Shown: piece by piece, positions 18,861-61,392 of the stretch
How positions within the stretch are numbered: the first letter of the stretch is position 1
Layout: each line of letters opens with the position of its first letter
Source: Octopus bimaculoides
Taxonomy: Eukaryota
Assembly: GCF_001194135.2 (NCBI RefSeq)
Contig: NC_068990.1
Span: 78,169,896-78,231,287, forward strand
DNA length: 61,392 nt
Reading direction: 5' to 3'
Notes under the pieces: generated by a model
The model's database searches: none
The model's input: only the letters and a program-made list of their open reading frames with translations
What the model was told of the DNA's origin: nothing
Made by a program: the position numbers and the translations under genes

Positions 18861-18905
<45 letters not shown>

Positions 18906-19685: not shown

Positions 19686-20409
19686 ATATCATGTTGACTT
19701 TCTGTGCCACATTTTATGGTTATTAGTCATACACCCTTCTTCTGTTCCCTCTCACTGTCACCCCACACAATGTTCAATATTTGGTGCGAGATTTTCTCTC
19801 TTTTCTATCCATCTCTTTATCCTTCTCCTCTTGTGCACAAAACCTTCCCCTTCTATTTCTATCTTCCTTCCTACCTATCTGCTGCCTTTCTCTTTACTAC
19901 CTTCCATTTTTTTCCTCTGTCCATCTCTGTCAACTACCTACTGTCTATCTTTATTCCCTTTTTTCTCCACACTCCCTCTTTCTTTCTACTTGCTCTTCCC
20001 CAACCCTCTCTACTCCACTCTGTCTCTCTTTCTTCACTTTTTTATTACTCATCTTTTTTCGACTTGACCAGGGCCTAAGTAAGACATATTTTCTTTCATC
20101 ACCTGCTCAGTATTCACTTCAGACCCGGAGTTTATCTTTTCTCTTTCTTTTTCCTTCTATCTTTTTTCCTTTTTATCCCATTTTCCAATCCTTCTCCTGA
20201 GCCCTCTTATTGTACCTTTGGAACACAAGCACCACTATTTTCTTTCTTTTTTGTTCGTTTTCGTCATGTAGTGTACCGCATTTCGAAATACTTGCAATTT
20301 GTATTTTTACTGCTTATGTTTGCTTCACTTGATAAATTTCTGAAATTAAACATTTTAATATACAAAATATACTTCACATTATTACATATAGTATATATTC
20401 ATGCAAAAA

Positions 20410-32345: not shown

Positions 32346-33959
32346 GTTTCTCATTAATTATGGTTAATGTCAACCGTGATCCCACTGACCCCAATATTTC
32401 AAAGATATAACTTTGACTGTGGAAAGTGAAATGTAGCGACTCCTGAGTCTATATTTCTGCTTTCTCTTTACCAACCAACAAGATACCTTCACTATGTTTG
32501 CTGGTCGGCGAAGGTGTGTTAGATTTTTTCCGCATTCTTTCATTTTATGATTGGAGACTGAAAACAGAAAATGATCGTAAGCAAACAACACTAAAATTTT
32601 GAAATGGAAATATGAACTCTTCCAGTAAAACTTTTTCAGAATTGTTATTGCAGTATCTTAAAGCTTAGAATCGAAATAAATGTTTAAAGTAAAAAAGAAG
32701 AAAAAGGTGGAGAGGGAGACAGTTTTTCGGTAAAAGCCTATGGCGTCATGAGTATGTGTGTGACAACGTCTTTCATCTGCCCAACACAGCTGAACACATT
32801 CGATCGTGACTGACGTTATGTATCAATACCGAAGCATTGCCCTCACAAAATGTTTTGAGGTGGTCGATCAAAATATATTTCGTTGTTGCAAACAGGAATC
32901 CGAAGAAATATTGAAAGTAGCGGGGTGCCTCGTTTGACACATCCTCCGGGACATACTAGAATAATCAATATTTCTAGTTTCAATTTGTGATCATAAAGTG
33001 AAGGAATGTCTTTATCTATATATATATCATCATCATCGTTTAACGTCCGCTTTCCATGCTAGCATGGGTTGGACGATTTGACTGAGGACAGGTGAACCAG
33101 ATGGCTACACCAGGCTCCAATCTGATTTGGCAGAGTTTCTACAGCTGGATGCCCTTCCTAACGCCAACCACTCCGAGAGTGTAGTGGGTGCTTTTANNNN
33201 NNNNNNGGCAGAGTTTCTACAGCTGGATGCCCTTCCTAACGCCAACCACTCCGAGAGTGTAGTGGGTGCTTTTACGTGCCACCGGCATGAAGGCCAGTCA
33301 GGCGGTACTGGCAACGGCCACGCTCGAAATGGTGTATTTTACGTGCCACCTGCACAGAAGCCAGTCCAGCGGCACTGGCAACGATCTCGTTAAGTTTTCT
33401 TTTTCATCTCGTACTAGTGGGGCTTCTGAGTGGATTTGGTAGACGGAAACTCAAAGAAGCCCGTCGTATATATGTATATTTATATATGTGTTTGTCTCCC
33501 CAACATCGCTTGACAACCGATGCTGGTGTGTTTACGTCTCCATAACTTAGCGGTTCGGCAAAAAAGACCGATAGAATAATACTACCCTTACAAAGAATAA
33601 GTCCTAGGATCGATTTGCTCGACTAAAGGCGGTGCTCCAGCAGGGCCACAGTCAAATGACTGAATCAAGTAAAAGAGTAAGATTCTATTGTTTTCCCTCG
33701 TGGCATTAGGAAGGGCATCCAGCTGTAGAAACTTTGCCAGATCAGATTGAAGCCTGGTGCAGCTTTCTGGCTTGCCAGCCCTCAGTGAAACCGTCCAACC
33801 CATGCCAGCATGGAAAGCGGACGTTAAATGATGATGATGAACTTTCCAGAAAATGGATAGCTTTTGATGAAATTTTATATAAATACCTTCCAAACGGTTT
33901 TTAGCATATCTCATGACCGTCTGATACCGTCCTTATCTATTTAATATTTTCTGTTAATT

Positions 33960-43475: not shown

Positions 43476-45560
43476 ATATAGCATGCCAGGTAGCATCTGG
43501 TGAGACACAGGAGTCTGTGCAGGAAGCACCCTGGAGATATCTCAGTAGCTGTATTGCATCAGAGGTCCAAGCCTATCCAGCAAGAAAGTTCGATCACTTG
43601 GGGCAAGGAGAGAAATCAAAACCCTCAATAAGTAGTAAAAGGGAGAGCAATAAAAGCTGAGAAGCAGAAGGGGACTAAAAGGGTTCAGTATACAAAGGAC
43701 ACATTTAGGTTTACCTGATGGATCAGGTCGAGTAGATTCTAGCTCTAGGTATGTAAAAACCACTCTGAATGCCAACCCAGACTTTAGTAGAGTTGAATTA
43801 TCGGAAAATAAGCTTAACATAACAGTCCATCATAGAAAGAAGTTACAAAAACAGTGAAGAAAATCAGAACCAGATCCCACTCTTTGCCGAAGTGGTATAC
43901 TGTAAAAAATATATAAAACATACCTGATGCTCCTTCAGAGATGATGGACCAAAAAATCTGGAAAAAGGAAATCATTCCTTCAAGAAGGTAGAATGTTGTT
44001 TTGTACCAAAAGAATTATCTCACTCATGAGTTTTGAAGGTAAAATCTTCTTTTCAAAAAGATGACCTCGTATGTGACTGAGAATGGATACATGAATCCCT
44101 CTGTCCAGAAATCTAGAACAGTCTAGAATTCTCAGAAGATTTAGGAAGCATAAAAGCAAAGGTGAACTTGATAGTGGTCTGGTGAGATTTGATTGATACA
44201 TATGGATTAATCTCTCATACAGAAAGCCCTACACTACCACTACATCAAGGGATTTTGGAGTCATCCAGTTGTGTTTTAGAATGTGCCACCTTACAATTTG
44301 GTGGCAAGCCTTAGTGAAAGGAAGCATAACTGGTTACACAATTTTCCCCATTCTTTTCATCATAGGAATAAACCTCCTCATAACAACTGCTGATAAGGAT
44401 GTCTAAAGATTACAAATAGAGTTGAGCAGCCAATAACATCTAAAAAGTGAGGATCATGGATGTTCTTAAAGTGATAACCACAGTCTATGTACAAACAAAA
44501 CATACAAACTTTATTTGAACACAGCAACATGGGTTAGAATGAAGTTTAAGCTTAAGAAACCTAAAAAGTATGGTGATCAGTATAGGCATGCAAGTACAAG
44601 CATCAGCTATTCCATAAGTGGAGGAGAATCTGATCAAATGCCTTGAAAAATGTTTTGATATTTTACTCACTGATTAGAACGACCTCACCAATACTGAGAA
44701 GCAGGCAGATTCAGGGCTTTCAGGAAAATTCAAAGCATGGCTCTGCCGACATAGATTACATCTGAGATTTGCGTCAGTTGAGAGTATTTGACATACAGAC
44801 AAACGGAAGGAGTGGAAAAGATGAGTAACTCTGAAGTGGTACCTAAAATCTGGATTACTCTTGCTTCCCCTGTCATTTGTGGTGTAGAATAGTAATGATG
44901 AGCAAGTCAGACAGGCAGGTATCACTACAAGATCAGGATGCAAGTGGGCAACCAACTGCACAGTTGCACATGCTAAAAGCATGCAGCATTTGAATAGAAT
45001 GGTATGGTCTTGGTTCTTCCTATTTCCAACAGTGACCCAGGAAGTTGTATGACACCAAGATGAAGAAAGATCAAGAACTATAGAGCTAATATCTCAGAGA
45101 AGCTGAACCAAATGAGCCAACACAAGAGGAAGACCACATGGATTAGAACATTTGTGTTTTGTTTCTGCTGTCAGCAATGTATGGCATGCTACCAACACCG
45201 ACAAACCTGCACAGAAAGGACATGAAGGATAACCAGCTGTGTAGATCATGTGGCAAGAAGGGTAGCCTCATACACATCTTGTCAGGGTGTAAAACAGTAC
45301 TTATGCAAGGGAGATATTAGTGGTGCCATGAGAAGGTGGTTACGCTCACACCCTAGAGTAAAAGAGATGCAAAAAGCACCAACAGCAGGGGAAAATGGCA
45401 CCACCAATGAAGGAAAGATAATAGTGAAAAAAATGAGAAGTTTACAGGAGGTCCAATCATGGAATATGACAGTAGACCTGGGAGAAAGTAAAAAGATCCT
45501 TTACCTTTAAAACAGATAAGGTTTAGCATCAAGAACAGCATCCACCTGCAAAACAATGCT
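43470..45560 (+). mobile_element. Non-LTR retrotransposon of the restriction-like-endonuclease group (Hero-like), decayed
   Basis: RT-like motif near 44335 (degenerate GCTISPILF), VRMKFK near 44535, and zinc knuckle PTPTNLHR...LCRSCGKKGSLIHILSGC...GRY*WCHEKV. Confidence 0.75.
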
Positions 45561-46900
45561 TCAGATCACATATTTATTCAGTTCATGTGAGTATAGAAAA
45601 CAATGGATGCAAAACAAATAAAGAAATGAATCCATATAAAATTGAGAAATTTAGTTTTGCACTTGTTACTTGTTTTTAGCTGGAGCTGTAAGAGTATATA
45701 TTTTAAAATTTCTTAATATGAAATCTAAATACTCTGTATTACCTTGATATTGATATGTGAGTAAGTATATAGAATTATTTGATGGTTGTTTTTCAAGATT
45801 AGTTATGAACTGGCTAAATAAATAAGCATTTGGAGTATCATGTCATACTGCAGGATTTTCTATCCACTGTTAGACACATGTGATCTAGAAGGATTATTTA
45901 CAACCATGTGGTTTTGGGTTTGATCCCACTGTATGACAACTTAGCCAAGGGTCTTCTATAGCCTTGAGTTGACTGATACTTTGTGAAATTTAATAGCTGG
46001 GGTGGGGAAACTTTTTAGTGCAGCCGGCAAAAATTTATGAGTGGATCACAAGTTCTAACTCTTTATATCTGTGTATAATTTGATGAACATTAATAAAGAG
46101 AAGTTTAACACATTAAATTAATGCTGCCACTGAATTTAGGACATTTATATTATGAGGTATTCTATATTTTTCCAAATGCACCTATCCAAATGATGGAGAA
46201 ATCATAACAATCAAGCACAGACCAAATTTAATTTTGAAAAATTACATTAATACCTGAATAACATATGTGAATGACATTTTTAAACAAATTTACCCTAGTG
46301 ATAGTTTTATCAAAGCTTTAACTTTAAAATTTGGTTTTGTTTAGTGAGAAAGGTGAAATTACTTCTTTTTTTTTTTTTTCTTGAAAGTTTAGGAATATCA
46401 TGCCTTTGAATAAACTGCTATTCTTAGTTCATTACTCAAGTTTTCGTCAGCAAGTCTGGTACGAAGATTTTTTGCATAATTCAATTTGGCAAAAAAACTG
46501 CTCACATTGATAAGTTGTCAAAAATTCAGATTGATGAATTCCAATAAAGATAGAGTATCATATTTCGATTTTATTAACTTATACGAATGCAAACCAATTA
46601 ATGCTAATTGTAAAGAATCTGAAGCTTCCTCAGAACACCTCGAAAGGTGTTTCAAAAACACATAGATCGATTTTGTTATCTTGTATTTCTTCAAAAGACT
46701 TCTGCACTTGTCAAAGTGTTTCCTTTGTTGATTTGGGATTTTGTTTCTCAATTTGGAAAAATGCGTGAAACACTTTCTTTTCAATTGTGTGACAAATAAA
46801 TGAATCATTGATTCAAAGCTTTTGGTATGAGAAAGCAAACTGGTTATTAGCTGATTGGAACCTTGTAGTTTCAAGTTCAAATTATTTAAATGACTAATTA

Positions 46901-48181
46901 TCTCTCTATATAAAATTCTTTGTCTGTTCCCTATGTATTCTCAAACGGCTCCACAAAATCAAATCATATTTTACAAGGTAATAAATAGTGGTGTCAACAT
47001 GTAATTTTTATTTCAATTTGGATTGAAACAATATAACATTATCTAGACATAATCTTTCTGAAGTCAAACTGTAGTTAAAGGACATTTTATATGACGTCGA
47101 TGACGATGTCACATTTTGTGTGTGTGTGTGTGTATCTGTTTGCGCCTTCCTTACATACGACATAGTAGAGGACATTTTATATGACGACGACCATGATGAC
47201 ACATTTTGTGTGTGTATGTGTGAATGTTTGCGCCTTCTTTATGTACGACAAGGTAAAAGACATTTCATACCTTGACAACGGCACATTTTGTATATGAGTG
47301 TGTATGTGTTTGCATGGTTGTTATGTAAATGTATGTTTGTGTGTGTTTGTCTTAGTATATATGAGTGTGTGTGATTGTCAATTACACTGATGTAAACTGG
47401 GTTATGTGAAAGAGCTATACTGGCTCCAACTAATGAAATGGTTGATAAACTCAATCATGAACTTTTGCAAAAGTTAACATGTACATCAGAAATGACTTTT
47501 CCCTCAATTCACGCAGCAATCGATCAAGAACATGTTGTTCAATATCCTGTTGAATTTCTGAACACATTTATAAACCCACTGGGATGCCATCGCATAACTT
47601 GATACTAAAACTGGGTGCTCCCATTATGTTATTTAGGAATTTTGACCCACCTCGCCTGTGTAATGGAACTCGCTTAATTGTTACTTCCATGAAGCCCATG
47701 TCCTACAGGCAACAATCATAACTGGTAGTCACAAAAAAGAAAATGTCTTTATTTCAAAATTTCCTCTCATATCTACTGATGTTCCATTTGAATTTAAGAG
47801 GCTTCAGATTCCAGTCAAACTAAGTTTTGGTATTTCAATTAACAAATCTCTGGGTCATTCCCCCAAGGTAGTTGGACTTGATCTCTCTACTACATGCTTC
47901 TTCCATGGTCAACTCTATGTTGGTTGCTCACAAGTTGGAAGCAGCAACAATTTATTCATTTGGACAAAAACAAAAAAAAAATGACGCAATGACTATTGTT
48001 TACCCTGCTTCAAGATTGACAGATTTTCACTTCTAAATTCTATTATCATCACAATTTGGATATTTAAAAAAATAAAATATAGATATTTTGAAATAATTAT
48101 GAGAAAAAAGATGTATCTTCATATTTATTTAGTAATCTGAATAGCAGCAGTAACCTGGGCAACGCTGGGTAATTCAGCTAG
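46901..48181 (+). mobile_element. Internally deleted Helitron with both termini
   Basis: A|TC 5' end at 46901; PIF1 helicase C-terminus (LAPTNEMVDKLN, PIMLFRNFDPPRLCNGTRL, HGQLYVGCSQVG); hairpin acctgggcaacgctgggt then CTAG|T at 48178-48182; about 87-bp tandem repeat at 47080-47260. Confidence 0.92.
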
Positions 48182-48836
48182 TATCTACTAAAAATGCTAA
48201 ATCACTTTGAATCTTATCTACCAGTTCTACAATAGGAACTCCTTTAATATTCATAAAAAAAATTTCACTTCTTCCATCAGTCCATAAAATCGCTTAAGCA
48301 TTTGGGTCTACATAACCACCTAACTTCACAATGCTACAATAAATCCCCATATACAGCTTCAAGATCTTTCAAAAATTCTTTAAATTCCCTATTATTCAAC
48401 CCTTTGTTTTTATCAAATTAACAGCCTTAGTTACAACCTTCATTACATTGCCCATCTTAAGAGATTTTGCACTTAAACTTTGCATATGAATAAAGCATTG
48501 ATTGGCACACAAAGTTTCTTAAATTTATTCTTAAGCAGAACTATCAACCCTTTTTCACAACCTACCACAGATAGAGTGCCATCTGTAGCGATACCACTCG
48601 CTTTTTTTTTCATACAGTAAATCAAAATCCTTTAAGGCTCTAGTTGTTCTATGCATTAATTTCAAGGCAAGAAATTCTTCCCAAATGTTGAGTTTTGCAG
48701 TTATTCCACGTATAAATATTACTATCTGGGCGGTAATTAGACAGATCAGTTGTTTCATCAATAGCTAGTGAATATAAAACGAATTCTACTGAATCAGATT
48801 TTGAATGTCATAAGCAGTATCTTTGGTTAATGTTTA

Positions 48837-49136
48837 CAATATTACCCGGAAACGAAATCAGAAAAAAAACTAGTGCAACAGGTGTAAAACAATGTGTATG
48901 AAACGAATATGAAAACAAAAATGTGCACAAAGCAACGGAGTGGGGGGAGGGGACTTTCAGAAAATTCTGATAACATTTTTGTAACAAATCGTGTCTATTG
49001 AAGAAGCCAAGTCAACAATGTGTTGAATCAAAAGATTCTAACCCTTTTAATCCAATCTCTTGTCGCCACATGAAATCAGCTTTTTTAGTGGGGAGATGAC
49101 CCAATTTTTTAATGGGGGTGAGATAACCAAAAAGTA

Positions 49137-49171
<35 letters not shown>

Positions 49172-50589
49172 GTTGAATGAATTACGGTAATCGGTTAATG
49201 TTTACTTTCCTCCATAACTTTGAGGAAAATGGATATCCTTTCATGAAATTTTAATATAAATACCTTTCAAGCGGCATACATTACGGTTATAAAGAAATTT
49301 GTGGGGGAAATCTTTTCCGAGGCGTGGGGAGAGGACTTTCAGAAAATTCACAAGATCCTATTGTTTTCCCTCGTGACATTAGGAAGGGCATCCAGCTGTA
49401 GAAACTTTGCCAGATCAGCTTGAAGCCTTGTGCAGCTTTCTGGCCCTCAGTGAAACCGTCCAACCCATGCTAGCATGGAAAGCGGACGTTAAACAACGAT
49501 GATGATAATGATGAACTTTGAGGAAAATGGATATCTTTTGATGAAATTTTATATAAATACCTTTCAAACGGCATACATTACTATTATAAAGAAATTTGTG
49601 GGGGAAAAATCTTTTCCGATGGGGAGAGGACATTCGAAGAGAAAGAAATTCATAAATTATTTTTTTTGCTTGAGTGTAACGAAAAAAGGCTTGAAAAAAA
49701 AACCCCTTTTCTTTTTTTTTGTAATAGAAAAAGGTTTTAAAAAAAGATTCCATGTATCATGGTGAGAGAAACAAATTCATAAATATGGTGTTGAATATGG
49801 TTTCATTATAGAAAAAAGTTAAGGGCGATTTAGCTGTTGTTTTTAGCATATCTGATGACCGTCTGATACCTTCCTTATTTGTTTAATATTTTTGCTTAAT
49901 TACAAGTTCTCTCAGTCACCAATAAGCAAGTTAACAAGTCTAATGGGTGTTGGAAGATCTGTATAGAATGTTTTAAAGTATATAAGCATAGTTGAGGGCA
50001 AGAAGAATGTTTTCCAGTATAAAAAATGCGCCAGTGTACCTTTAAGGAGTTATTGGTGAACGACATCAAGAACCAGTATACATTCTAGGAACATGGGTGT
50101 AGTCTTACAGCCGTCAAAAGAAACTTATGAAGTTGGGGTGGTGAGATGGCCTGTATGAAAAGTAACTGAGCGACATATTGTTCAAGTAGCTAGGTCTCTC
50201 ATTCCTTGTCGAACAATAGACTTTCTCGGGTTTCTCCATAAATGCTCAGTATTTTGAGTGTGAATAGAAAGGGATTTCTATAAAATTTCATTAGAAGATA
50301 TCAAAGTTACGAGGGGAAAAAAATCGGATCTTGTGAATTTTCCAAAAGTCCTTTCCCCACCCCCAGAAAAAGATTTCCCCCACGGGTTTCTTTATAATTG
50401 TAATCTGTGTTATTTGAAGGATATTTATATGAAATTTCATTAAAAGATATTCATTTTCCTCAAAGTTACGAGGGAAAAAGAAGTCGGATCTTGTGAATTT
50501 TCCGAAAGTCCCCCCCCCCTTTGCTCGCATTTTTGTTTCATTTTTTTACACCCGTTGCATTATTATTTTCTTCTTTCTTGTTAGTATTG
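48837..50589. mobile_element. Foldback-like non-autonomous element with long imperfect TIRs and TA flanks
   Basis: TA|CAATA... at 48835-48841 and ...TATTG|TA at 50585-50591; subterminal units repeated directly (49217, 49510) and inverted (50295-50510); contains an RTE tail and a Merlin fragment. Confidence 0.7.
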
Positions 50590-51114
50590 TAAAATATTAA
50601 CCATATCAGTTATCTTTAATACGATCAGAAACACTTCTGGATAAACTAATTATTTCCTAACAAAAGTTTTCTTCCTCATAATTAACTGATTCACTTTCAA
50701 GAATCGTCCTTTAAAAAAATCTTTTCTTTTGATTAGATTTTCTTTCAAGGAGGCTTTCTTGGCTAAACATTCAGATTCTTTTAAATTTTCATCGGTCTTA
50801 TGCTTATTCACAAAATCCTCCTCAATATTATATTTTTTGTGAACAGCTATTTATTTGTTGCAAATGAAACAAAAACACTTATCTATTTCAATAAAAAAAT
50901 AATAAGGTTCAGTCCATTTTTCATCAAACAAAGCACGTTCATCAACACCTTTCTTTATAACCACTTGCCATATTGATTAAGGGTATCGAAAACAAATTGG
51001 TTTAACAAAGTTATAAACTGGTTAAACTTATCACTTTCGGAATTTTTATCATTACCGCTGCTGCCTGGGGAAAACAAAAGCCAACCAACTCTTCATGAAT
51101 GCATTCAGTGTTGT

Positions 51115-51481
51115 GTGTTGGCACTCCGTCGCTTACAACAGAGGGTTCCAGTTGATCCGATCAACGGAAACAGCCTGTTCGTGAAATTAACGTGCAAGTG
51201 GCTGAGCACTCCACAGACACGTGTACCCTTAATGTAGTTCTCGGGGATATTCAGCGTGACACAGTGTGACAAGGCTGGCCTTTTGAATTACAGGCACAAC
51301 AGAAACAGGAAGTAAGAGTGAGAGAAAGTTGTGGTGAAAGAGTACAGCAGGGTTCGCCACCATCCCCTGCCTGAGCCTCGTGGAGCTCTAGGTGTTTTCG
51401 CTCAATAAACATTCACAACGCCCGCTCTGGGAATAGAAACCACGAGTGCGCTGCCCTAACCACTGGGCCATTGCGCCTCCG
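51115..51481 (-). mobile_element. SINE family C, full-length with 11-bp TSD
   Basis: Reverse complement of 30324-30703; TSD TTCAGTGTTGT at 51104-51114 and 51482-51492. Confidence 0.9.
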
Positions 51482-52756
51482 TTCAGTGTTGTAAAAAAAA
51501 AAATATCTGACAAAAATTAAGATATTGTTTGGTGGGTCGATAACTGATAATTCAATGACCTGAAAGTAGTTCCTGTTGACCTTCTTGAGACACTGATAGC
51601 AAAAAGTGCGACATTCCTTTCGATGGTTTCCTTTATGAGTTGATATCTTCATTTCAACGGAGTATTATAAATGTATAAATACCTCTAATGGTGATACTTT
51701 AGAAAAGAAAAAAAAAGAAATCGAATTTACAAATTTCAAAAAAGATTATTTTTCACAGCTTTTTCAAAAAAAAAAAGTCATATTTTTTTTTTATAATTCT
51801 CTTCATAAAACACCAAATTAATAGTTTCTGTTTCGATGAAGCTTTACCAGTTTGTTTTAAATTTTTTAATAGACTTCTAAATATTTTTTGCTTATAGATT
51901 GACAGAAAGAGGGTGAGTGTCGATTTTGGAGATTTCTTTTTTATTTCATAAAATACGTGAAAATGAAATAGGGAGTGGGGTTCTTAGATATGAATAATTT
52001 TTACACGGTATCTTCTACAATCCTTCAGCTTCATTTAAATAAAAAGTTATTTCAATACATGCAATATATTTTTTGTTTTCTCACCTAGTGTAGTTGAGTC
52101 TCAACGAGAGTACAAACCTAGCAACATGTGTTTTATAGTGAAAACAAAATTTCCATTCAAATGGCAACTACTGGACAATTTCTGTTTGAGTCTGACCTTT
52201 TTTAGTCATAGTGGAAACGTGACCTATGTCGCAAATAGACGTACGAGTATTGTATAAATTTTATAATTGAAAAACTTAGTCACTCCTGCGCCTACTACAA
52301 AATATACTGTGTGAAAGAAACAGTATGGAAGACGCGTGTAGTGACGGACACCTTTGTATCTGGCCAGGGGTTAGTTAACTTTTTTTGTTACCACCTCAGT
52401 AGTAAGATCAGGCTGTAGAAGAGGTATCTGTCACGAGACAGATTCATAAGAAGATGGAAGCCTGTGGCGGGGGAGCTGGGAGTGTTTGGCACCAGGTAAG
52501 TGGAAGCCAAAAACAAGGGAAAGAAAAAGCAAGGGGGTCTACCCTGGTGGTCGGATGCCTATCCTTCAAGAAAGCCATTACAAATTGCATCTGTAATGAG
52601 CAATGCTTTAATCGAACATTGTAAATATAATCAAATTATTATGGTATATTTAAAATTGTAAATATTTAATCGATACAGCTACTCTCCCACTCTTTTATGT
52701 TTGTCTGTCCTTGTTCGTCTCCTCTTTGTAATGCCTTTATGGCAAATATTTATGAA

Positions 52757-53115
52757 ATAAAGTAGCTTGCTTACCAACCACATGGTTCCGGGTTCGGTCC
52801 CACTGCGTGGCACCTTGTGCAAATATCTTCTACTATATAGCCTCGGGCTGACCAAGGCCTTGTGAGTGGATTTGGTAGACGGAAACTGAAAGAAGCCCGT
52901 CGTATATATGTATGTGTGTGTGTTCATGTCTGTCTCCCCAACATCGCTTTACAACCGATGCTGGCTAAGTTACGTGTCGCCGTAACTTAGCGGTTGGGCA
53001 AAAGAGACCGATACAAATAAGTACTAGGCTTACAAAGAATAAGTCCTGGGGTCGATTTGCTTGACTAAAGGCCGTGTTCCAGCATGGCCGCAGTCAAATA
53101 ACTGAAACAAAAAAA
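52757..53115 (+). mobile_element. SINE family A
   Basis: agtagcttgcttaccaaccacatggttccgggttcggtcccactgcg...caaataactgaaac. Confidence 0.88.
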
Positions 53116-53515
53116 TTACATGTGTATATCAGCCTGCGGGTGCAATAATGTGGGCTTGCGGGTACAATTGCACTCGCAGGCAGGGATTTTCCCACCCTTT
53201 CTTAACAGGGACCGGAGAATGTGTACGTGTTTATATGCATCTTCATATTGACACAACTTATGGAATGGTAGTATTTATGTTCCACATAAACATGTCTGGC
53301 AGATGAGTGGAATAAAGTACCTTGAAAAAAATAAAAATATATAAGTGTTGGGCATGAAGAAGAGTGTCTAGCTGTAGAATACTGCCTCAAGAAGTTTCCT
53401 GCAAACCATATCAACATGGAAAACACTTGTAAAACCAATGATAATGATGATGTTGCCAATGTTTTGTTATACTTCTGAACAGGACACTCAATTCTGTAGG
53501 TCTCAGATAACTTAC

Positions 53516-53581
53516 CTTTATGGAACAAATATCAGGTTGTAGACCATAGCCTTTGGGGGTGAATCTGAAACATGGCTGTTG
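53516..53581 (-). CDS. Candidate 66-nt antisense exon (QQPCFRFTPKGYGLQPDICSIK)
   Basis: Acceptor tttttctctagtattttttcacacag|, donor AAG|gtaagt; only the phase-0 frame is open. No partner exons found. Confidence 0.3.
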
Positions 53582-53789
53582 CTGTGTGAAAAAATACTAG
53601 AGAAAAACTTATATTTAATCAACTTAATCCTATGCTTTGGGTTCCTTGTAACTTGTAAAGACCTCTTTATATTTCCAAGTGTATTTTACTATAGACTACC
53701 ATTCTGACTATGGCTGATATCTGTAGATGTCAGTGGATTAACATGGTTTCCATTTTTAATGTTCTTTTTCCTATTTTCTATTTCTCCAG

Positions 53790-54255
53790 AATTGTTAAGT
53801 CCAGTCTATTATTTCCATCTTCTATGGACAACACAGCCATCTCTACTTCACCACCTGTTGCTAATACAACTGATATCCTCACCGCTACTGCTCTTACAGA
53901 TATTAATATTACTGCGACTACTGTTAGTATCAATAATATTGAAACTTTTGAAGATTCTGATGAAGATGTCAAACTTTTTGACTTGAAGAGAAAGTTACAC
54001 GAAGGCTGTAAGTCAAACCACACGACAGATACTAAATATTTAGAAACTAATGGATTACTCCTAGAATTCCACAGCAAAGCAAAGAAGAGAAGGGGCCGAA
54101 AGCCGAAAATGGTGCACCCAAAATCATGTGATAGTGAAGAATTGAAGGAGGAAATAGAACAGTGTCTAGAGAAGAAAAAGACAAAAAGTTGTAAAAGAAA
54201 ATTACACAGCTACCAAATCCCTTTAAGCCCCCAGAAAGATCTTGGAAACAAGGTA
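53790..54255 (+). CDS. DNMT3: DNMT3-like gene, N-terminal exon (probable ATG at 53824; Thr-rich, acidic, then basic with KKRRGRKPK)
   Basis: Acceptor ctattttctatttctccag|; open frame to phase-0 donors at 54252 (AG|gtagta) or 54255 (GTA|gtaagt); splices in frame to the PWWP exon. Confidence 0.7.
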
Positions 54256-55058
54256 GTAAGTTATTTTACAACAAGGTTGTATTTTGTTTTAAGGTCTTTG
54301 AAATAATTTATTTAATAATTAAAAGTTGCTGAGCGTATTATCTCTTTATCTGATTAATTTCAACAGTGTTTGTTTACAACTACTAACCTTTTATTTTCAA
54401 GAATCTTGTATTTTTAGACAATCCTAGAATATTGGTTTTGTAGATTAAAAAAACCAACAAATCTTACATGTAAGCCTACAGATAAGCATTTTCCTATCTC
54501 TTTGCTACTAGCTGTGTCTTCTCTCTATTTCTTATATTACTACTATAAGCTGCTACTCCATTTGACACTAACCTTATACTGCTTTCTCAGTGTACACATT
54601 GCACTCTGCTTGGAAGTCCTTTTGTGTACTATAGATATATTGTCCAATTCTTTCCCACTCCTGACACTTGCAAGTTTCTATAATTCCTTCTTGCCAACAT
54701 GTTCTTTTCAATTAGCATCAGTTCAAATATTAACCATTCTAACCTCATCAAATTTTCTTCTGTTCATGCCCAAAGCAACTTACTTAGAATGGTGGATACT
54801 CTTAAATATCATTTGTAAATGAAGAATAAACAATTTTAATGTTGCTAAAGTATATTTTAGCAACAGAGAAATAACAGATATGAAACATTTTGTTACTAGT
54901 GAAAACCTTTCAAATGATGCCTGAATAAAATATGCATCCAACATTAAACAGCAGAGATGTTCACTATCAGATATAAATTATATTTTTCTTTCAGATGTTA
55001 TGGATTCATAGCGGAATGATTTTAAATTTACCTTCAAATGTTTCTCTCTATTGTCCAG

Positions 55059-55205
55059 TGTTTTCCTGTTGGCAGTGTAATATGGGGTAAATTATCTGGA
55101 TTCAAACCATGGCCAGGATTAGTAATAAATCATGAAGACATACAGAAAAAGTCATCTCCATTAACTGTCTGGGTTTTATGGTTTGGTGACTATAAAATCT
55201 CAGAG
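55059..55205 (+). CDS. DNMT3: DNMT3-like gene, PWWP exon 1 (CFPVGSVIWGKLSGFKPWPGLVINHEDIQKKSSPLTVWVLWFGDYKISE)
   Basis: Acceptor tctctattgtccag|, donor GAG|gtatgt, phase 0/0. Matches the DNMT3-type PWWP signature (human DNMT3A GELVWGKLRGFSWWPG...WVMWFGDGKFS). Confidence 0.9.
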
Positions 55206-55633
55206 GTATGTTATCTTCTATTTCATATGTTTAATGTCTGGAAAATTAACTAATTTTGTCAGAAATAGATATCTGTCTAATTTATCTGTGTGTGTGTGTG
55301 TGTATGATTGATATTCTTTAACTGTTGGAAGGTCTAGGCGGACTGTAACCAAGGATACCTGCTGCATCAAATACAATTAGTAAAGTGGATGCTTGTAAAC
55401 TTAATCCTAAATCTTTGGTCTCACATGCTCTCCCCTTTGGTGCATTTGTTTCTCTTTCTAACCTGAATGTTCACTAGTGATTAGATTCAGAATATAGTCT
55501 CCTTTTTTTCTTTTTTCTTTTTTGCTTGTAAAATAGTGTCCAATTAATATCTGATCATTGTGTGTGCCTGTGGTATGATGTGCATGTGTGTATGTACACA
55601 ACACACACTTGAGATTTTCCTTTGTAATTTCAG

Positions 55634-55732
55634 TTACCACTTTCTAAAGTGACTCGTTTTGACCAGTACTTTTATTTGAATTATAAGAATCCTTCCAAAG
55701 TGTTCAGCGTGGCTGTTACAGAAGCTCTAGAG
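55634..55732 (+). CDS. DNMT3: DNMT3-like gene, PWWP exon 2 (LPLSKVTRFDQYFYLNYKNPSKVFSVAVTEALE)
   Basis: Acceptor tttgtaatttcag|, donor GAG|gtaagt, phase 0/0. Aligns to VCVEKLMPLSSF...YRKAIYEVLQ. Confidence 0.88.
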
Positions 55733-56691
55733 GTAAGTGTACTCTTTGCTCTGTATAGTTGTTACTTTATTTATTTGTGTATAATGCACAAATGCTGGGG
55801 AAAAATATGTTTAGAACTACAAGATTTGTGTTTAGAACTACAAGTTAAATACCGGTCAATATGTACCTTTGAAGATGTGTGGAATATGAGATTGCTTACT
55901 TGAAAAACAAATAAATTTTATTGACAAAAAGGGTATCCAACTGTAATAATGCATTTGTCTAAGCCATGCTGACATAGAAAAATGGATGTAAAAATTAATG
56001 GAAACAAACTTAGAAATGAGTAAGAGTTGGCAGCTAGCTGTAGAATACTACTTCAACACCTAGCCCATGCCAGCATGGGAAACTTGGACAGAAAAAACAA
56101 TGGTGATGATTGCTTTTCTAAAATGTTCTTACTCTGGAAATAATTGCATGATAGAGTTTTACAGCATGGTTTTCAATCAAAATGAAATCCACCATAGCTT
56201 GAGATACTGTGTAGCTTTGGTGCTGGAATTGAGATATGACATGTCTGTGGGTTCATGCTAAATTGTTAGCAAACCAATAGCTGAACACAACCAATAGCAA
56301 TGTCATTGACATAAACATCATCACCAAAAATACTAACTTTAGTATTGATCCCCATTCATCATTATCAACACTATTTAGCCTCTGCTATCAGCATCAACCT
56401 ATGATTACATGAACGAATGAGGTTGTTTGGCTTGCTACAAATAGCAGCCAAATTTCACTCAAATTAGATCTTGCCATCTTATAACAAGAAGGGAGAACAC
56501 ATTGGGTAATATGAAGTGTAGTCCTAGATAATTCTCGTTTGAAAAAGAAAATAATGTAGGAGAGAATCACAGTGGGATTCTTTTGAATATGATTTACCTT
56601 AATCAAATCTGACCTGAAAGCCTAAACACCAGCCCCCCCCCCCCTCTCTTTTGCATGAGTACAGGTTGAAACTGATATTTTTGTATTCCAG

Positions 56692-56812
56692 GTATGTGCA
56701 CAACGTAGTGGTCTGAAAGAAGATGAACTTAGCTCTGAACATTTGTTTAACTGGGCAAAACACCGTTTTATGGAAATGGTTGAGGATAAAGATCCATTTC
56801 TACCTTTGAAAG
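56692..56812 (+). CDS. DNMT3: DNMT3-like gene, PWWP C-terminal exon (VCAQRSGLKEDELSSEHLFNWAKHRFMEMVEDKDPFLPLK+G)
   Basis: Acceptor atttttgtattccag|, donor G|gtcagg in phase 1. Aligns to VASSRAG...EWALGGF. Confidence 0.8.
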
Positions 56813-57589
56813 GTCAGGTTTGTTCGCTTTTGCATTTTAGAATCACCTGAAATATTAACATAGTTTCCCTCTGTCTTAATTTTCTATTTGTTGTATGTGG
56901 GTTAAGAGAGCATGCCCTCTGACTCCAGCGAAATTGATGTTCTTAATGTTCTGATTAAACTGTTACAAGTCAATACCTGCAGGCAGGGAAGACTAACCAT
57001 ATGGTTGAATGGATTTGACCATTTGTCCTCAGTCTAAAAATAAAAGCCCTTTCAAAATTCTTTGTTTGTCAGATCCGTTCTACCATTCAGGACCAAAGTT
57101 TTGATAACCAACAAAATTATTTTCTCTTTGATATTTAATGTTTATTGTTACGTTGCTGGACTTTTTTTTTTATCTATCCCATGTAAGTTAAAATTTTTCC
57201 TTTTTGACCAGGGTCTTTCATTGCTTTGTTGATTTATTAAGATTATTTTCCGTTTTATTCAAATTGACTTTCAATTCAAACACACACACGTACAGATATT
57301 TCTTTTATAAAATCTTTTGAACTTATGTCGATCTTATGTCAATTGAAAAAGATTTCGACAACTGATTAAAACAGAAGATTTCTATGACAATATAATAAAT
57401 GTATTTGCCTTGAAAGATCGAAGAACTGAATTAATTTATAAATAAGGTATGTAAATAATAATTTTTAGTACATCTTTTAAAAAAGTTTTAAATGCATTAA
57501 AACAGCAACCATCATGGGCATGTTATGAAACTAATTTGGTTCTTTTAAATAAACAATTATGAAAAATGAATTAGCTCAACCAATATGTA

Positions 57590-58805
57590 TGAGGGTGGGT
57601 TGAAACATTCATAGGTTGATTATGAAGGAGTGACGCTAGAAATGTTGCATGCATTCATTTCAACTTTGCATATTTATAACTGCATTGTTTCCGTGCAAGT
57701 AAACTGACATCTGACTGTTCAGAAAAGACTTCAAAAGTAACTAGTAGCAACTTCTCTCGAAAATAAATAAAATTTGGCATCGTGGTGTTATCACATATCT
57801 TCAGAAAAGGCTTTAGCCCACAAGGACATTCATGCTGACATGGTTGCTACATTACAGGATGACACTCCAGCTTTATCAACAGTGTAAAAGTAGGCAGTTG
57901 AATTCAGGAGGGGGAGGGGAGAGTCTTGAAGATGACATCCCACAACTGCCATCACTGAAGAAAACATTGATTGATGGATAACAGGCAATTGACTATAAAC
58001 CAAATAGCCAATGTTATTAGCATATCCTGTGAGGGAGTTGAGAATATTCTGCACAATGAACTTGGCTTGGCGAAGGTTCATGCTTGATGGGTGCCATGAC
58101 TTCTGACACCTGATCAAAAGCACACCAAGCTGGTCACATGACTGGGAAATCTGACATTGTTTGACGCAGATCCAGCTGGTCTTGTTGAATGTATCCTAAC
58201 GCATGATGAATGTTAGGTTCATCACTTTAAGCCAGAGACAATCAATGCAGGGGAAACACTCCTCCTCACCTGTTTGATAGAAAGCCAAGGTTGTTTCATC
58301 TGCAGGGAAGGTGATGGACTTAGTTATTTGGCATGCAAAAGGTGTGTTTATTTACCCTCTTCAAAAGGGCCATATCATCAGTGCAACGTACTATGCCAAC
58401 ATGCTGGGGCACTTACAAAATGCCCAGCAAAACTGACGAAAGCGTCTTCCTCCTCCTTTGTCAGGACAATGCTCCAGCACACATGTCCTTCGTTTCAATG
58501 GCTGCTATGTATGAATGACTTCGAACTAGTTGATCACCATCCCTATTCTCCTGATTTGGCTGTCTGACTATCATCTGTTTGCTAACATGAAAAACACATG
58601 GCTAGGAACCAGTATCACTATGGTGATGTCCTATTTGCTGTTGATAACTTTTTGGTGAACAGGAAGAAAGACTTTTCACCAATGGGCTCCAAGCACTGCA
58701 GCATCAATGGAAGAAGTATATGGACTGCAAGTGGTGGTGGTGGGGGGGTCTATGTTGAAAAATAAACCTTATTTGATCACATTTCATCTTTTCAATCAAC
58801 CCTTG
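57590..58805 (+). mobile_element. Mariner element, near full length (about 1.2 kb) and decayed, in a DNMT3 intron
   Basis: TA flanks at 57588-57589 and 58806-58807; TIR tgagggtgggttgaaa / ttcaatcaacccttg; motifs WVP*LLT, THDEC*VHHF and HHPYSPDLA. Confidence 0.9.
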
Positions 58806-58889
58806 TATTTATTGCATGACCAACCTCAAAAGTCACTGCATGCCACTGATATATGTGTGTGGATGTGTAAAAAAAAATCATTGATAGGG

Positions 58890-59760
58890 TATTACCCACC
58901 CTTAAGTCTAAAATTAGATTAGACTTCTGGTGGTTGGATGGTTTAAGCTTCTAGAAATTAGTAAGAATAGTAAATTCTTGCAACTAGATATAGAAAACTA
59001 TTAACCCGATTGTTCTTAATCAAGCCCTGATTTATTGCATGAAAAATTCTGATTTGTCCCGATGCGAAATAGATATTATCCGAGCCACTCTAGTAGATTA
59101 GATAGGGAGAATGCATTTGACATAGAAATGGGCTCGTACGACTCTGCTCAGATCACTGACCTAGTCGGTTTATATATCTTTTCATTAATGCAATCTTCCT
59201 TTCCAGAAGTAACAGGGGGTCTATATAGGGATAATGCTTTATTTTTCTGGACAGAAGTAGCAAAGTACAGTTAGAAAGAAATAGGAAAAATTTCTTTAGA
59301 CTTTTCAAAAATTTAGTACTAAATATTACAAATGGGTAAAGATTATTGTGGAGTGAATTTTCTTGACGCTAGCTTCTGTCTCGATACTGGATTATTTGAA
59401 CTATTTCATAAGCCAAATAATCATATTAAGTACATTAACATAGCATCCAACCATCCAACCTTGATTATATGGGGACTAGTTAAGGATATTTCTACAAGAA
59501 TTTCTAGATTATCTGCTAATAATAAAATTTTTGAATCACATGCAACTTATAATGCTGCTCTAGCTAGGGTTGGGTACTGTGAAAAAATTCAATATATACA
59601 CGAAGCAGGCATACACTACACTGGTAATTCATCCAACTGTGATACACATTGTACACCACCACAATGTCACGGTTTAAGAACTCACTCAGATAAAGAATAC
59701 AGACCAAGAAGAATTGTTGGAAGTATGAATGATTTGAATAGCACCTGCATTTGACTCCAT
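58890..59760 (+). mobile_element. Penelope-like retroelement RT fragment
   Basis: FDIEMGSYDSAQITDLVGLYI, GGLYRDNAL, VNFLDASFCL and YINIASNHP motifs. Confidence 0.85.
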
Positions 59761-60199
59761 TTCTCATTCTATCTGTTATACAAAAATATTTCACTTAGCC
59801 TTGGAATTTGTACCTTTATGAGCAGGCTGTAATATCCTTGGCACTCATGTGAATTTTTGCTACCCTAGTAAATATTTTTTCTGTGTTATTGTATACATTG
59901 AAAAAATACACATACATTTATGTGTGTTTATATATATGCATGCATGTGTACATATATATATGTGTGTGTATATATATATGTATATATATATGTGTGTGTA
60001 TATGGGGAAAGTAAGAAGAAAAAAGCGAAAATGCACATTGAATATCAAAAAAATAAAGGCATTTTTTATGAAAAGTAGTGATAAATAAATACAATTAGAT
60101 GAACTGAGGTAGAATTAAGAGGAATAAAAGTCATTATTTTGAACTGTTAAAGAGATTCAAAGTCAAACCGGTGTCATCATTGCTGTTCACTGGGTTTGA

Positions 60200-60216
60200 A
60201 TGTGTGTATATATATA

Positions 60217-60297
<81 letters not shown>

Positions 60298-60332
60298 GTG
60301 AGTATATGTATATATGTGTGTGTGTATATATA

Positions 60333-60365
<33 letters not shown>

Positions 60366-60510
60366 ATATATATTTGTATATATATGCGTGTGTGTGTATA
60401 TATATGTGTATATATATATATATATATTTGTATGTATATGTGTGTGTATATATATATATGTGTGTGTATGTGTATGTATATTCATATATGTCTATATATA
60501 GATGTGTGTG
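60200..60510. repeat. Compound (TG)n/(TA)n microsatellite
   Basis: Directly visible; source of the VCVYIY and THTHIY pseudo-ORFs. Similar tracts at 14670-14910 and 59920-60005. Confidence 0.97.
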
Positions 60511-61002
60511 TGTCTGTTTCCTTGTCTTAGCATCATATGATTGTTGTAAATGAATGACATTCATTTCTAATATTTTGCCAAGATCTGTTCTCTGACCTTA
60601 GGAAGATATTACCTTGCTTTGAAACAGGAAGGACATCTGGTAGTAGAAAATCTGTGTCAATAAATTCTGTCTGACCCTTGATGACTGGGCACTTTTTTTC
60701 ATTGCACTGGTGAGGTCATCTTGTAATTATCTAGACTAAAAAACTGCCAAACACATTTTAATCTGTACTTTCATCTCCTTACATCTGTACATATGTTACG
60801 AAAGCTAGATGTGCATATCATTCTAACATGGAATCAAAGATCAGGGCACGTTTGAGTAAAACAGGCAAAAAAGCAAACATTGTCATTTCCTTTCCTAGCA
60901 AAGATATTTTAGTACTCTTCAGTGCACTAGCTTCTCTGCAAAATTCATGTAGAGTTGTTGGACAGCGAGTTTCAACAATTGTCAAACCTATATATATATA
61001 TT

Positions 61003-61229
61003 AATTCTTTATTGCCCACAAGGGGCTAAACATAGAGGGGACAAACAAGGACAGACAAAGGGACTAAGTCGATTACATCGACCCCAGTGCGTAACTGGTA
61101 CTTATTCGATCAACCCCGAAAGGATGAAAGGCAAAGCCAACCTCGGCGGAATTTGAACTCAGAACATAACGGTAGGCGAAATACCGTTAAGCATTTTGCC
61201 TGGCGTGCTAACGATTCTGCCAGCTCGCC
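61003..61229 (-). mobile_element. SINE family B inserted in (TA)n
   Basis: Reverse complement of 12008-12242, flanked on both sides by cctatatatat. Confidence 0.9.
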
Positions 61230-61392
61230 TATATATATATATATATATATATAGTTTTAGGGAAAATAACCAATTTTCAAGAACTCATCGATGAAAATCC
61301 ACTATCACATATAGAAAAATTAATAATTAAAAGCACAATAAATGAGTATAATATAAAGTAAAGTAAATATCATAAGATAAATATAATAAAAA

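What the first reader, a model, noticed from the sequence alone, without database searches (positions are those of the whole stretch)
53790..56812. Spliced DNMT3-type (de novo DNA methyltransferase) PWWP gene in an octopus-like genome, largely missed by the ORF track
Seen: four GT-AG exons splice into one open frame of about 265 aa from the ATG at 53824, ending in a complete PWWP fold. Established: the WGKL.GF..WPG...WV.WFGD.K.S signature is the DNMT3 subtype of PWWP rather than NSD, HDGF, MSH6 or BRPF. The residues corresponding to human DNMT3A F303, W306, W330 and D333 (the H3K36me2/3 cage) are retained, although the motif reads KPWP. The intron positions KISE|LP and EALE|VC and the phase series 0,0,0,1 match my recollection of DNMT3A introns 7-10. 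Inference: if this is Octopus, it matters because I recall DNMT3 being reported as absent from Octopus bimaculoides gene sets; that recollection must be checked. A fragmented, transposon-bloated locus would explain a missed annotation, and an H3K36me reader would fit gene-body methylation.
Basis: partly seen in the sequence, partly recalled or inferred. Interest (0 to 1): 0.85.

Follow-up and report, generated by a model that had tools for sequence, protein, structure and literature searches.

The report
Octopus DNMT3 gene, first four exons
The flagged stretch is the 5' end (exons 1-4, including the PWWP histone-reading domain) of the Octopus bimaculoides de novo DNA methyltransferase gene DNMT3; it is real and correctly read, but it has been annotated since 2015 and already studied, so it is ordinary.

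Summary
Four GT-AG exons on the + strand (53824-54255 or -54252, 55059-55205, 55634-55732, 56692-56812; phases 0,0,0,1) splice into a 265/266-aa open frame. Its C-terminal part is a PWWP domain, closest to DNMT3A/3B. The DNMT3 interpretation is also correct.

The novelty premise is wrong. Window 43824-61392 is 100% identical to O. bimaculoides chromosome CM046610.1. The spliced peptide equals residues 1-266 of RefSeq XP_052827281.1 / XP_014770808.1 (UniProt A0A0L8HNR6, LOC106869540, Ocbimv22010487m), "DNA (cytosine-5)-methyltransferase 3B", 748 aa, with PWWP, ADD and C5-methyltransferase domains.

That gene has 19 coding exons over 44 kb; the window holds exons 1-4 only. Both alternative donors are already annotated as isoforms X1 and X2. 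Macchi et al. 2022 tabulate its tissue expression. A 2025 preprint reports that this protein is active in a cell reporter assay.

All 18 intron phases match scallop DNMT3. The intron positions within and just after the PWWP domain match a fish DNMT3A-like gene.

Verdict: already known; low interest. Two minor by-products: the O. vulgaris annotation mis-models the ortholog, and coleoid cephalopods read K/R-P-W-P where nearly all other DNMT3s read SWWP.

The parts
53824..54255 (+). Coding exon 1 of DNMT3 (LOC106869540). It runs from the start codon ATG at 53824 and encodes aa 1-144, an octopod-specific N-terminus predicted to be disordered, with the basic stretch KAKKRRGRKPK. There are two tandem alternative donors: 54255|GTAAGT (isoform X1, 748 aa) and 54252|GTAGTA (isoform X2, 747 aa, lacking V144).
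   Evidence: pLDDT is below 50 for residues 1-143. The exon is 92% identical in amino acids to O. vulgaris and cannot be aligned to scallop or fish DNMT3.
54256..55058 (+). Intron 1 (phase 0), GT-AG.
55059..55205 (+). Coding exon 2 (aa 145-193): the beta-barrel core of the PWWP domain, CFPVGSVIWGKLSGFKPWPG...WVLWFGDYKISE. It carries the aromatic-cage residues F159, W162 and W185, plus D188.
   Evidence: It is 49/49 identical in amino acids to O. vulgaris. The model shows strands at 151-154, 162-167, 180-185 and 191-195.
55206..55633 (+). Intron 2 (phase 0), following KISE. The position is shared with scallop DNMT3 and with a fish DNMT3A-like gene.
55634..55732 (+). Coding exon 3 (aa 194-226): the last PWWP strand and the start of the first helix (LPLSKVTRFDQYF...AVTEALE).
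55733..56691 (+). Intron 3 (phase 0), following EALE. The position is shared with scallop and fish DNMT3.
56692..56812 (+). Coding exon 4 (aa 227-266 plus the first base of codon 267): the C-terminal helices of the PWWP domain (VCAQRSG...HLFNWAKHRFMEMVE...PLK). The exon ends in phase 1.
   Evidence: The model shows helices at 215-231 and 241-254.
56813..61392 (+). The first 4.6 kb of intron 4, a 16.3-kb phase-1 intron. Exon 5 (GDPYPQFVKRKLQ...) lies about 11.7 kb beyond the window end. This stretch holds interspersed-repeat debris and a TA/TG microsatellite, and no DNMT3 coding sequence.
   Evidence: intron 4 = L002 12990-29290. (no ADD or methyltransferase hits anywhere in the window)..

Best explanation
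The region is the 5' part (coding exons 1-4 of 19) of the single-copy Octopus bimaculoides DNMT3 gene (RefSeq LOC106869540, 'DNA (cytosine-5)-methyltransferase 3B', 748 aa). Exon 1 encodes a disordered, basic, octopod-specific N-terminus. Exons 2-4 encode a DNMT3-type PWWP domain. The ADD zinc-finger exons and the ten C5-methyltransferase exons follow downstream of the window, in the same gene and on the same strand.

Inferred mechanism, by homology with mammalian DNMT3A/3B: the PWWP cage (F159, W162, W185, with D188) reads H3K36me2/3 on transcribed chromatin. The ADD domain reads unmethylated H3K4 and relieves autoinhibition. The catalytic domain then methylates CpGs de novo. This fits the gene-body methylation reported for octopus.

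What is shown here: gene identity, exon structure, domain architecture, conservation of the key residues and of the intron positions, and the fold. What is shown by others: expression and activity in a reporter assay. What remains inference: H3K36me binding by the octopus PWWP.
For: - Identity of the DNA: window 43824-61392 is 100% identical over 17,569 bp to CM046610.1 of GCA_001194135.2.
- Identity of the protein: the spliced peptide equals P0003 residues 1-266 (265/266 with the 54252 donor, 266/266 with the 54255 donor). P0003 is XP_052827281.1 / XP_014770808.1 / A0A0L8HNR6.
- Domains: Pfam finds PWWP, ADD_DNMT3, DNMT3_ADD_GATA1-like and DNA_methylase, all above their cut-offs.
- Gene structure: 19 exons were mapped exactly, and the 18 intron phases are identical to Pecten maximus DNMT3.
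- Catalytic motifs are present: FDGIGTG, GGSPCNDLS, ENV, TTRSNS, GRAWSVPV.
- Fold: the AlphaFold model gives the PWWP, ADD and methyltransferase regions pLDDT of about 70-95. The top 50 PDB matches are all DNMT3A, 3B or 3C (E down to 2e-50; methyltransferase domain TM 0.93, rmsd 2.2 A).
- Cage residues: W162, W185 and D188 are invariant in a 34-sequence DNMT3 alignment. In a 127-sequence alignment, F159 is F in 90, W162 is W in 125, W185 is W in all 127, and D188 is D in 122 (E in the other 5).
- Orthologs: the orthologous exons are intact in O. vulgaris, and O. sinensis has annotated orthologs.
- Literature: expression across tissues (Macchi 2022 supplement); obDNMT3 (A0A0L8HNR6) active in a cell silencing reporter (bioRxiv 10.1101/2025.09.24.678339); octopus 5mC concentrated in gene bodies (PMC9476566).
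Against: Nothing contradicts the identity. There are three limits.
- The window itself holds only exons 1-4, so the ADD and methyltransferase evidence comes from the contiguous chromosome sequence (L002), not from the window.
- Histone binding by this PWWP is untested, and the signature motif is KPWP rather than SWWP. The position equivalent to human W305 is P only in coleoid cephalopods among 127 DNMT3s, so reader specificity could differ.
- Expression is low in most tissues.
Confidence: 0.97

Rival explanations
1. It is a stand-alone short PWWP protein or a truncated DNMT3 relic or pseudogene with no catalytic part. This would resemble the 268-aa 'hypothetical predicted protein' model in O. 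vulgaris.
For: The only strong hits in the first homology search were a 268-aa O. vulgaris model without ADD or methyltransferase and a 156-aa fragment. The window itself contains no ADD or methyltransferase exon.
Against: The O. vulgaris model is an annotation artefact. It skips PWWP exon 2, joins exon 5 to the motif-I exon in the wrong frame, and then stops. Intact ADD and methyltransferase exons nevertheless lie downstream in the same locus. In O. bimaculoides the full 748-aa product maps exactly as 19 GT-AG exons, it is expressed, and it is reported to be active.
Confidence: 0.02
2. The PWWP belongs to another PWWP family (PWWP2A/B, MSH6, NSD, HDGF/LEDGF, BRPF, ZMYND11) rather than to DNMT3.
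For: PWWP2B is a fairly close second among solved structures (E=3.8e-9).
Against: DNMT3B and DNMT3A score better, at 6e-12 to 4e-10. MSH6 scores 0.01 and HDGF and ZMYND11 score 0.1 or worse. NSD and BRPF were not reported at E<=1. The same gene product carries the ADD_DNMT3 and C5-methyltransferase domains. The intron positions are those of DNMT3 genes.
Confidence: 0.01

Closest known systems
Octopus bimaculoides DNMT3B (LOC106869540; XP_052827281.1 / XP_014770808.1; UniProt A0A0L8HNR6; Ocbimv22010487m)
   Same: It is the same gene. The DNA is 100% identical, and the peptide equals residues 1-266.
   Different: Nothing differs. The window simply stops inside intron 4, so it holds 4 of the 19 coding exons.
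Octopus sinensis DNMT3B isoforms (XP_029641100.1 and others) and the O. vulgaris ortholog on OX597823.1
   Same: These are orthologs in the same 90%-identity cluster, with the same exons. PWWP exon 2 is identical in amino acids.
   Different: The O. vulgaris annotation holds only a mis-spliced 268-aa model. The O. vulgaris gene is longer: more than 65 kb, against 44 kb.
Human DNMT3A / DNMT3B (PWWP structures 3LLR, 1KHC, 5CIU; full-length cryo-EM structures 9E05, 9PRW, 8EIH)
   Same: The architecture is the same: PWWP, ADD, then C5-methyltransferase. The cage residues F303, W306, W330 and D333 and the catalytic PCN and ENV motifs are conserved. The fold matches, with methyltransferase TM 0.93. 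The intron positions within and just after the PWWP domain (KISE|, EALE|, phase-1 K|G) are shared with a fish DNMT3A-like gene.
   Different: Overall identity is about 35%. The N-terminus is unrelated. The motif is KPWP instead of SWWP. The residue equivalent to R882 is H, flanked by R at the 878 and 884 equivalents (bioRxiv 10.1101/2025.09.24.678339). The invertebrate gene is single-copy and predates the vertebrate 3A/3B split, so the RefSeq label '3B' is nominal.
Molluscan DNMT3 (Pecten maximus XP, P0005; Acanthosepion pharaonis, P0004)
   Same: Pecten has the same domain set and identical phases for all 18 introns. The cuttlefish shares the x-P-W-P motif, as RPWP.
   Different: Identity is 38-50%. 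Scallop keeps RWWP. The N-terminal extension before the PWWP domain is not conserved.

Membership tests
DNMT3 (de novo DNA cytosine-5 methyltransferase) | An N-terminal PWWP domain of the DNMT3 subtype. | tested here: met
   Pfam PWWP E=4.3e-11. The best PDB sequence matches are the DNMT3B and DNMT3A PWWP domains. The PWWP lies in the window (exons 2-4).
DNMT3 (de novo DNA cytosine-5 methyltransferase) | An ADD (ATRX-DNMT3-DNMT3L) cysteine-rich domain in the same polypeptide. | tested here: met
   PF17980 at E=9e-16 and PF21255 at E=6e-9 in P0003. The exons map at L002 30319-41293, downstream of the window on the same strand.
DNMT3 (de novo DNA cytosine-5 methyltransferase) | A C-terminal C5-methyltransferase domain with motifs I (FxGxG), IV (PCN, catalytic Cys), VI (ENV), IX and X. 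| tested here: met
   PF00145 at E=7e-17. FDGIGTG, GGSPCNDLS, ENV, TTRSNS and GRAWSVPV are present. C542, E588 and N589 are invariant in the 34-sequence alignment. These exons lie outside the window.
DNMT3 (de novo DNA cytosine-5 methyltransferase) | An orthologous gene structure, with shared intron positions and phases. | tested here: met
   All 18 intron phases are identical to Pecten DNMT3. Most positions, including the KISE|, EALE| and phase-1 K|G introns, are shared with the Scleropages DNMT3A-like gene. Human intron numbering (introns 7-10) was not checked.
DNMT3 (de novo DNA cytosine-5 methyltransferase) | A three-dimensional fold matching solved DNMT3 structures. | tested here: met
   AlphaFold model with mean pLDDT 70 (domains 70-95). 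The top 50 Foldseek PDB matches are all DNMT3A, 3B or 3C, with E down to 1.9e-50.
DNMT3 (de novo DNA cytosine-5 methyltransferase) | Retention of the H3K36me2/3 aromatic cage (human F303, W306, W330, D333), and actual binding of the mark. | tested here: inconclusive
   The residues are retained as F159, W162, W185 and D188. Binding cannot be tested here, and the neighbouring motif is KPWP instead of SWWP.
DNMT3 (de novo DNA cytosine-5 methyltransferase) | DNA methyltransferase activity. | not testable with these tools
   Activity of obDNMT3 (A0A0L8HNR6) in a fluorescent silencing reporter is reported in bioRxiv 10.1101/2025.09.24.678339.
PWWP2A/PWWP2B | The PWWP is closest to the PWWP2 family, and the protein has no ADD or methyltransferase domain. 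| tested here: not met
   PWWP2B scores E=3.8e-9, weaker than DNMT3B at 6e-12. The product has ADD and methyltransferase domains.
MSH6 / NSD / HDGF / BRPF / ZMYND11 PWWP proteins | The PWWP is closest to one of these families. | tested here: not met
   MSH6 scores E=0.011, ZMYND11 0.14 and HDGF 0.69. NSD and BRPF were not reported at E<=1.

The most novel reading that the evidence does not exclude
The coleoid-cephalopod change of the signature motif from SWWP to K/R-P-W-P might alter the chromatin-reading specificity or affinity of the DNMT3 PWWP domain. The position equivalent to human W305 is Pro only in Octopus and Acanthosepion among 127 DNMT3s. From my own memory, unchecked here, this sits next to the serine whose S270P change in human DNMT3B causes ICF syndrome. 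Such a change could contribute to the unusually low (<10% of CpGs), gene-body-restricted methylation of octopus.
Probability: 0.1. Interest if true: 0.35.

Novelty: already known. Interest (0 to 1): 0.06.

Why it matters
It matters little as a discovery. The gene is in the 2015 O. bimaculoides gene set, in RefSeq, in UniProt and in EukProt. Its expression has been tabulated, and the protein has been used experimentally. The check does correct the belief that octopus lacks a de novo methyltransferase: octopus has a complete DNMT1 / UHRF1 / DNMT3 toolkit. Two small useful by-products remain. First, the O. vulgaris reference annotation mis-models its intact DNMT3 ortholog as a 268-aa hypothetical protein, which could mislead presence/absence surveys. 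Second, there is a cephalopod-specific variant of the PWWP signature motif.

Tried and rejected
- **First homology search.** The word-index search with the 265-aa peptide returned only two proteins and missed the identical RefSeq protein. A second search with a PWWP + ADD + methyltransferase query found it. Absence was therefore a sensitivity artefact, not evidence of missing annotation.
- **Stand-alone PWWP protein.** I considered this because of the 268-aa O. vulgaris model. I rejected it after finding the ADD and methyltransferase exons downstream.
- **Probe sequence.** All conclusions rest on database proteins obtained later.
- **Transposon fragments.** I tried to name the fragments in intron 4 (57.7-59.8 kb) and the repeat at 40.4-43.0 kb with Pfam. 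There were no significant hits; only a sub-threshold PHD_2 at E=0.0045. I therefore do not name their type.
- **Literature and look-ups.** Männer et al. 2021 (PMC8059957) is not held. The supplements of the Nautilus paper are not held. The look-up of P0046 found nothing on record.
- **Other scans.** The Rfam and tRNA scans of the window found nothing. The sigma-70 promoter scan is irrelevant for a eukaryote and I ignore it.
- **Human intron numbering.** The human DNMT3A introns 7-10 could not be checked directly. A fish DNMT3A-like gene and scallop DNMT3 served instead.
Full report
**1. Observation**

Reading window 53700-56900 and splicing the candidate exons confirms four + strand exons: 53824-54252/54255, 55059-55205, 55634-55732 and 56692-56812. 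Each is preceded by a polypyrimidine tract and AG, and each is followed by a GT donor. The exon lengths are 429/432, 147, 99 and 121 nt, which gives phases 0, 0, 0, 1. The result is one open frame of 265 or 266 aa starting at the ATG at 53824. The bacterial-style ORF list sees only fragments, as expected for a spliced eukaryotic gene.

**2. What the peptide is**

- Pfam places a PWWP domain at residues 148-225 (E=4.3e-11, 43.6 bits against a cut-off of 25.6, model positions 1-90 of 93).
- Against all PDB sequences, the best matches are the PWWP domains of DNMT3B (1KHC 6e-12, 5CIU 1.9e-11) and DNMT3A (3LLR 2.6e-11).
- The next matches are PWWP2B (3.8e-9), MSH6 (0.011), ZMYND11 (0.14) and HDGF (0.69).
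- In those alignments, GFKPWPG aligns with human GFSWWPG, and WVLWFGD aligns with WVMWFGD. The equivalents of human F303, W306, W330 and D333 are therefore retained as F159, W162, W185 and D188.

**3. Source and annotation**

A first homology search returned only a 268-aa O. vulgaris 'hypothetical predicted protein' (77% identity) and a 156-aa fragment. I fetched the O. vulgaris locus (L001, OX597823.1). It is colinear with window 48085-60291 at about 86-90% nucleotide identity.

Downstream on the same strand, that locus carries ADD exons and C5-methyltransferase exons. The latter include motif I (IRVLSLFDGIGTG), motif IV (GGSPCNDLS) and motif VI (ENV).

A second search used the window PWWP plus these O. 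vulgaris exons. Its top hit was P0003, 'DNA (cytosine-5)-methyltransferase 3B [Octopus bimaculoides]', 748 aa.

- The window peptide is identical to P0003 residues 1-266; the only difference is V144, which depends on the choice of donor.
- P0003 is XP_052827281.1 = XP_014770808.1 = UniProt A0A0L8HNR6 = EukProt EP00106_P003366.
- Its genomic locus, L002, lies on CM046610.1 of GCA_001194135.2.
- Window 43824-61392 equals L002 1-17569 at 100% identity over 17,569 bp.

The window is therefore O. bimaculoides, and the ATG at 53824 is the annotated CDS start (L002 position 10001).

**4. Whole-gene anatomy**

An exact spliced mapping gives 19 coding exons across L002 10001-54246 (44.2 kb). The intron phases are 0,0,0,1,1,1,0,0,2,0,0,1,0,1,0,2,0,2.

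- Exons 1-4 are the four window exons.
- Intron 4 is 16.3 kb, so exon 5 lies about 11.7 kb past the window end. This explains why no ADD or methyltransferase exon is found in the window.
- Isoform X2 (P0127, A0A0L8HNI8, 747 aa) lacks V144, which means it uses the 54252 donor.
- Pfam finds PWWP, ADD_DNMT3, DNMT3_ADD_GATA1-like and DNA_methylase in P0003, all above threshold.

**5. Intron conservation**

I mapped Pecten maximus DNMT3 (P0005 on L003) and a Scleropages formosus DNMT3A-like gene (P0103 on L004) in the same way. The scallop gene has the identical 18-phase series. The fish gene shares the introns after KISE/KFSE (phase 0) and after EALE (phase 0), the phase-1 intron after the PWWP domain, and most of the later introns. 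The human intron numbers were not checked.

**6. Residue conservation and fold**

- In a 127-sequence alignment of DNMT3 PWWP domains, the W306, W330 and D333 equivalents are W in 125 of 127, W in 127 of 127, and D in 122 (E in the other 5). The F303 equivalent is F in 90.
- In the same alignment, the W305 equivalent is Pro only in Octopus and Acanthosepion.
- An AlphaFold model of P0003 built from a 34-sequence alignment has residues 1-143 (exon 1) at pLDDT below 50, which suggests disorder.
- In that model the PWWP region has a five-strand barrel plus two long helices at pLDDT of about 70-90, and the ADD and methyltransferase domains are confident.
- All of the top 50 Foldseek PDB matches are DNMT3A, 3B or 3C structures. 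E-values go down to 1.9e-50, and the methyltransferase domain matches at TM 0.93 and rmsd 2.2 A.

**7. Selection**

Between O. bimaculoides and O. vulgaris, the four exons are 96.0, 98.6, 99.0 and 96.7% identical in nucleotides. The aligned parts of introns 1-3 are 92-94% identical and also carry many indels. The PWWP exons differ by a single amino acid. This is consistent with a functional gene.

**8. Literature**

- Macchi et al. 2022 (PMC9476566) discuss DNMT1 and UHRF1 in the main text. Their supplementary tables list DNMT3B as Ocbimv22010486m/487m, LOC106869540, XP_014770812.1 / A0A0L8HNI8 / A0A0L8HNR6, with low expression values across tissues.
- bioRxiv 10.1101/2025.09.24.678339 uses A0A0L8HNR6 as an octopus DNMT3 with PWWP, ADD and methyltransferase domains. 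It reports that obDNMT3 is active in a cell silencing reporter, and notes H at the R882-equivalent position with R at the 878 and 884 equivalents. P0003 shows exactly this...RNLNHSRRQRLLGRAWSVPV.
- The Nautilus methylome paper builds DNMT trees that include the two Octopus species (PMC12532940).
- None of the held papers I read that mention DNMT3 together with octopus reports DNMT3 as absent from octopus. The 'no homolog of DNMT3' statement I found concerns Biomphalaria glabrata (PMC5440852).

**9. Mechanism**

By homology with mammalian DNMT3A/3B (established knowledge), the PWWP cage reads H3K36me2/3. The ADD domain reads H3K4me0 and relieves autoinhibition. The catalytic domain then methylates CpG de novo. 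This would place 5mC in the bodies of transcribed genes, as reported for octopus.

Shown here: architecture, residues, fold and orthology. Shown by others: expression and reporter activity. Inferred: H3K36me reading by the KPWP-type PWWP.

**10. Verdict**

The DNMT3 reading is correct. The novelty premise is refuted. Category: already known. Interest is low.

Noticed in passing
L001 (O. vulgaris OX597823.1, GCA_951406725.2) 10001-75126: The O. vulgaris annotation models the DNMT3 ortholog as a 268-aa 'hypothetical predicted protein' (P0001). The model skips PWWP exon 2 and all the ADD exons, then runs into the motif-I exon in the wrong frame and stops. Intact PWWP, ADD and methyltransferase exons are nevertheless present at 11215-74249, and no other gene is called there. 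This is a real missed annotation, but it is in O. vulgaris, not in O. bimaculoides.
   Followed up: partly
window 54250-54262: There is a tandem alternative 5' splice site, AAG|GTA|GTAAGT. Donor 54252 gives isoform X2 (747 aa, without V144). Donor 54255 gives isoform X1 (748 aa). O. sinensis isoforms show the same one-residue choice (GNKCFP versus GNKACFP).
   Followed up: yes
window 55101-55112 (GFKPWPG, P0003 residues 158-164): The PWWP signature motif reads KPWP in Octopus and RPWP in the cuttlefish Acanthosepion. Of 127 DNMT3 sequences, 106 have W at the first-W position, and only the cephalopods have P there. The cage tryptophan that follows is conserved.
   Followed up: partly
window 53824-54255 (exon 1, aa 1-144): The N-terminal 143 residues are predicted to be disordered (pLDDT below 50). 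They contain a Thr/Asn/Ile-rich stretch and a basic run, KAKKRRGRKPK, which looks like a nuclear localisation signal (untested). They are conserved among octopods (about 92% with O. vulgaris; 84% with a third species, P0002). They cannot be aligned with scallop or fish DNMT3.
   Followed up: partly
window 340-39216: There are fourteen assembly gaps (runs of N, 10-878 nt, 4,656 nt in all). All lie upstream of the gene, and none lies at or beyond 43824. The DNMT3 part of the window is therefore not fragmented.
   Followed up: yes
window 40400-43000, 16770-17463, 10956-11256; also 18887-19690 and 33024-33406: These are interspersed repeats, each with 5-10 or more copies inside the 75-kb O. vulgaris DNMT3 locus (67-95% identity). 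The 40.4-43.0 kb copy carries decayed frames resembling reverse transcriptase and a zinc finger on the minus strand. Pfam gives only a sub-threshold PHD_2 hit (E=0.0045), so I do not name the element type.
   Followed up: partly
window 57971-59915 (intron 4): The short ORF fragments here, which look like transposase or reverse-transcriptase remnants, lie in sequence that is colinear with O. vulgaris intron 4 at 87% identity. Any insertion therefore predates the split of the two species. Pfam finds nothing significant.
   Followed up: partly
window 59919-60500: A TA/TG-rich microsatellite block (period 2, about 133 copies, plus 14-20-nt variants) lies inside intron 4. It generates long spurious ORFs rich in Cys, Val, Tyr and Ile in the ORF list.
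   Followed up: yes
L002 57706-64246 (outside the window, 3.5 kb downstream of the DNMT3 stop): The convergent neighbour on the minus strand is a FERM-PDZ protein tyrosine phosphatase (PTPN3/4-like; it has the FERM_N/M/C, FA, PDZ and Y_phosphatase domains).
   Followed up: no
tool behaviour: The word-index homology search with the exact 265-aa peptide failed to return the identical 748-aa RefSeq protein, which a longer composite query then found at once. Negative results from that tool should not be read as 'not annotated'.
   Followed up: yes
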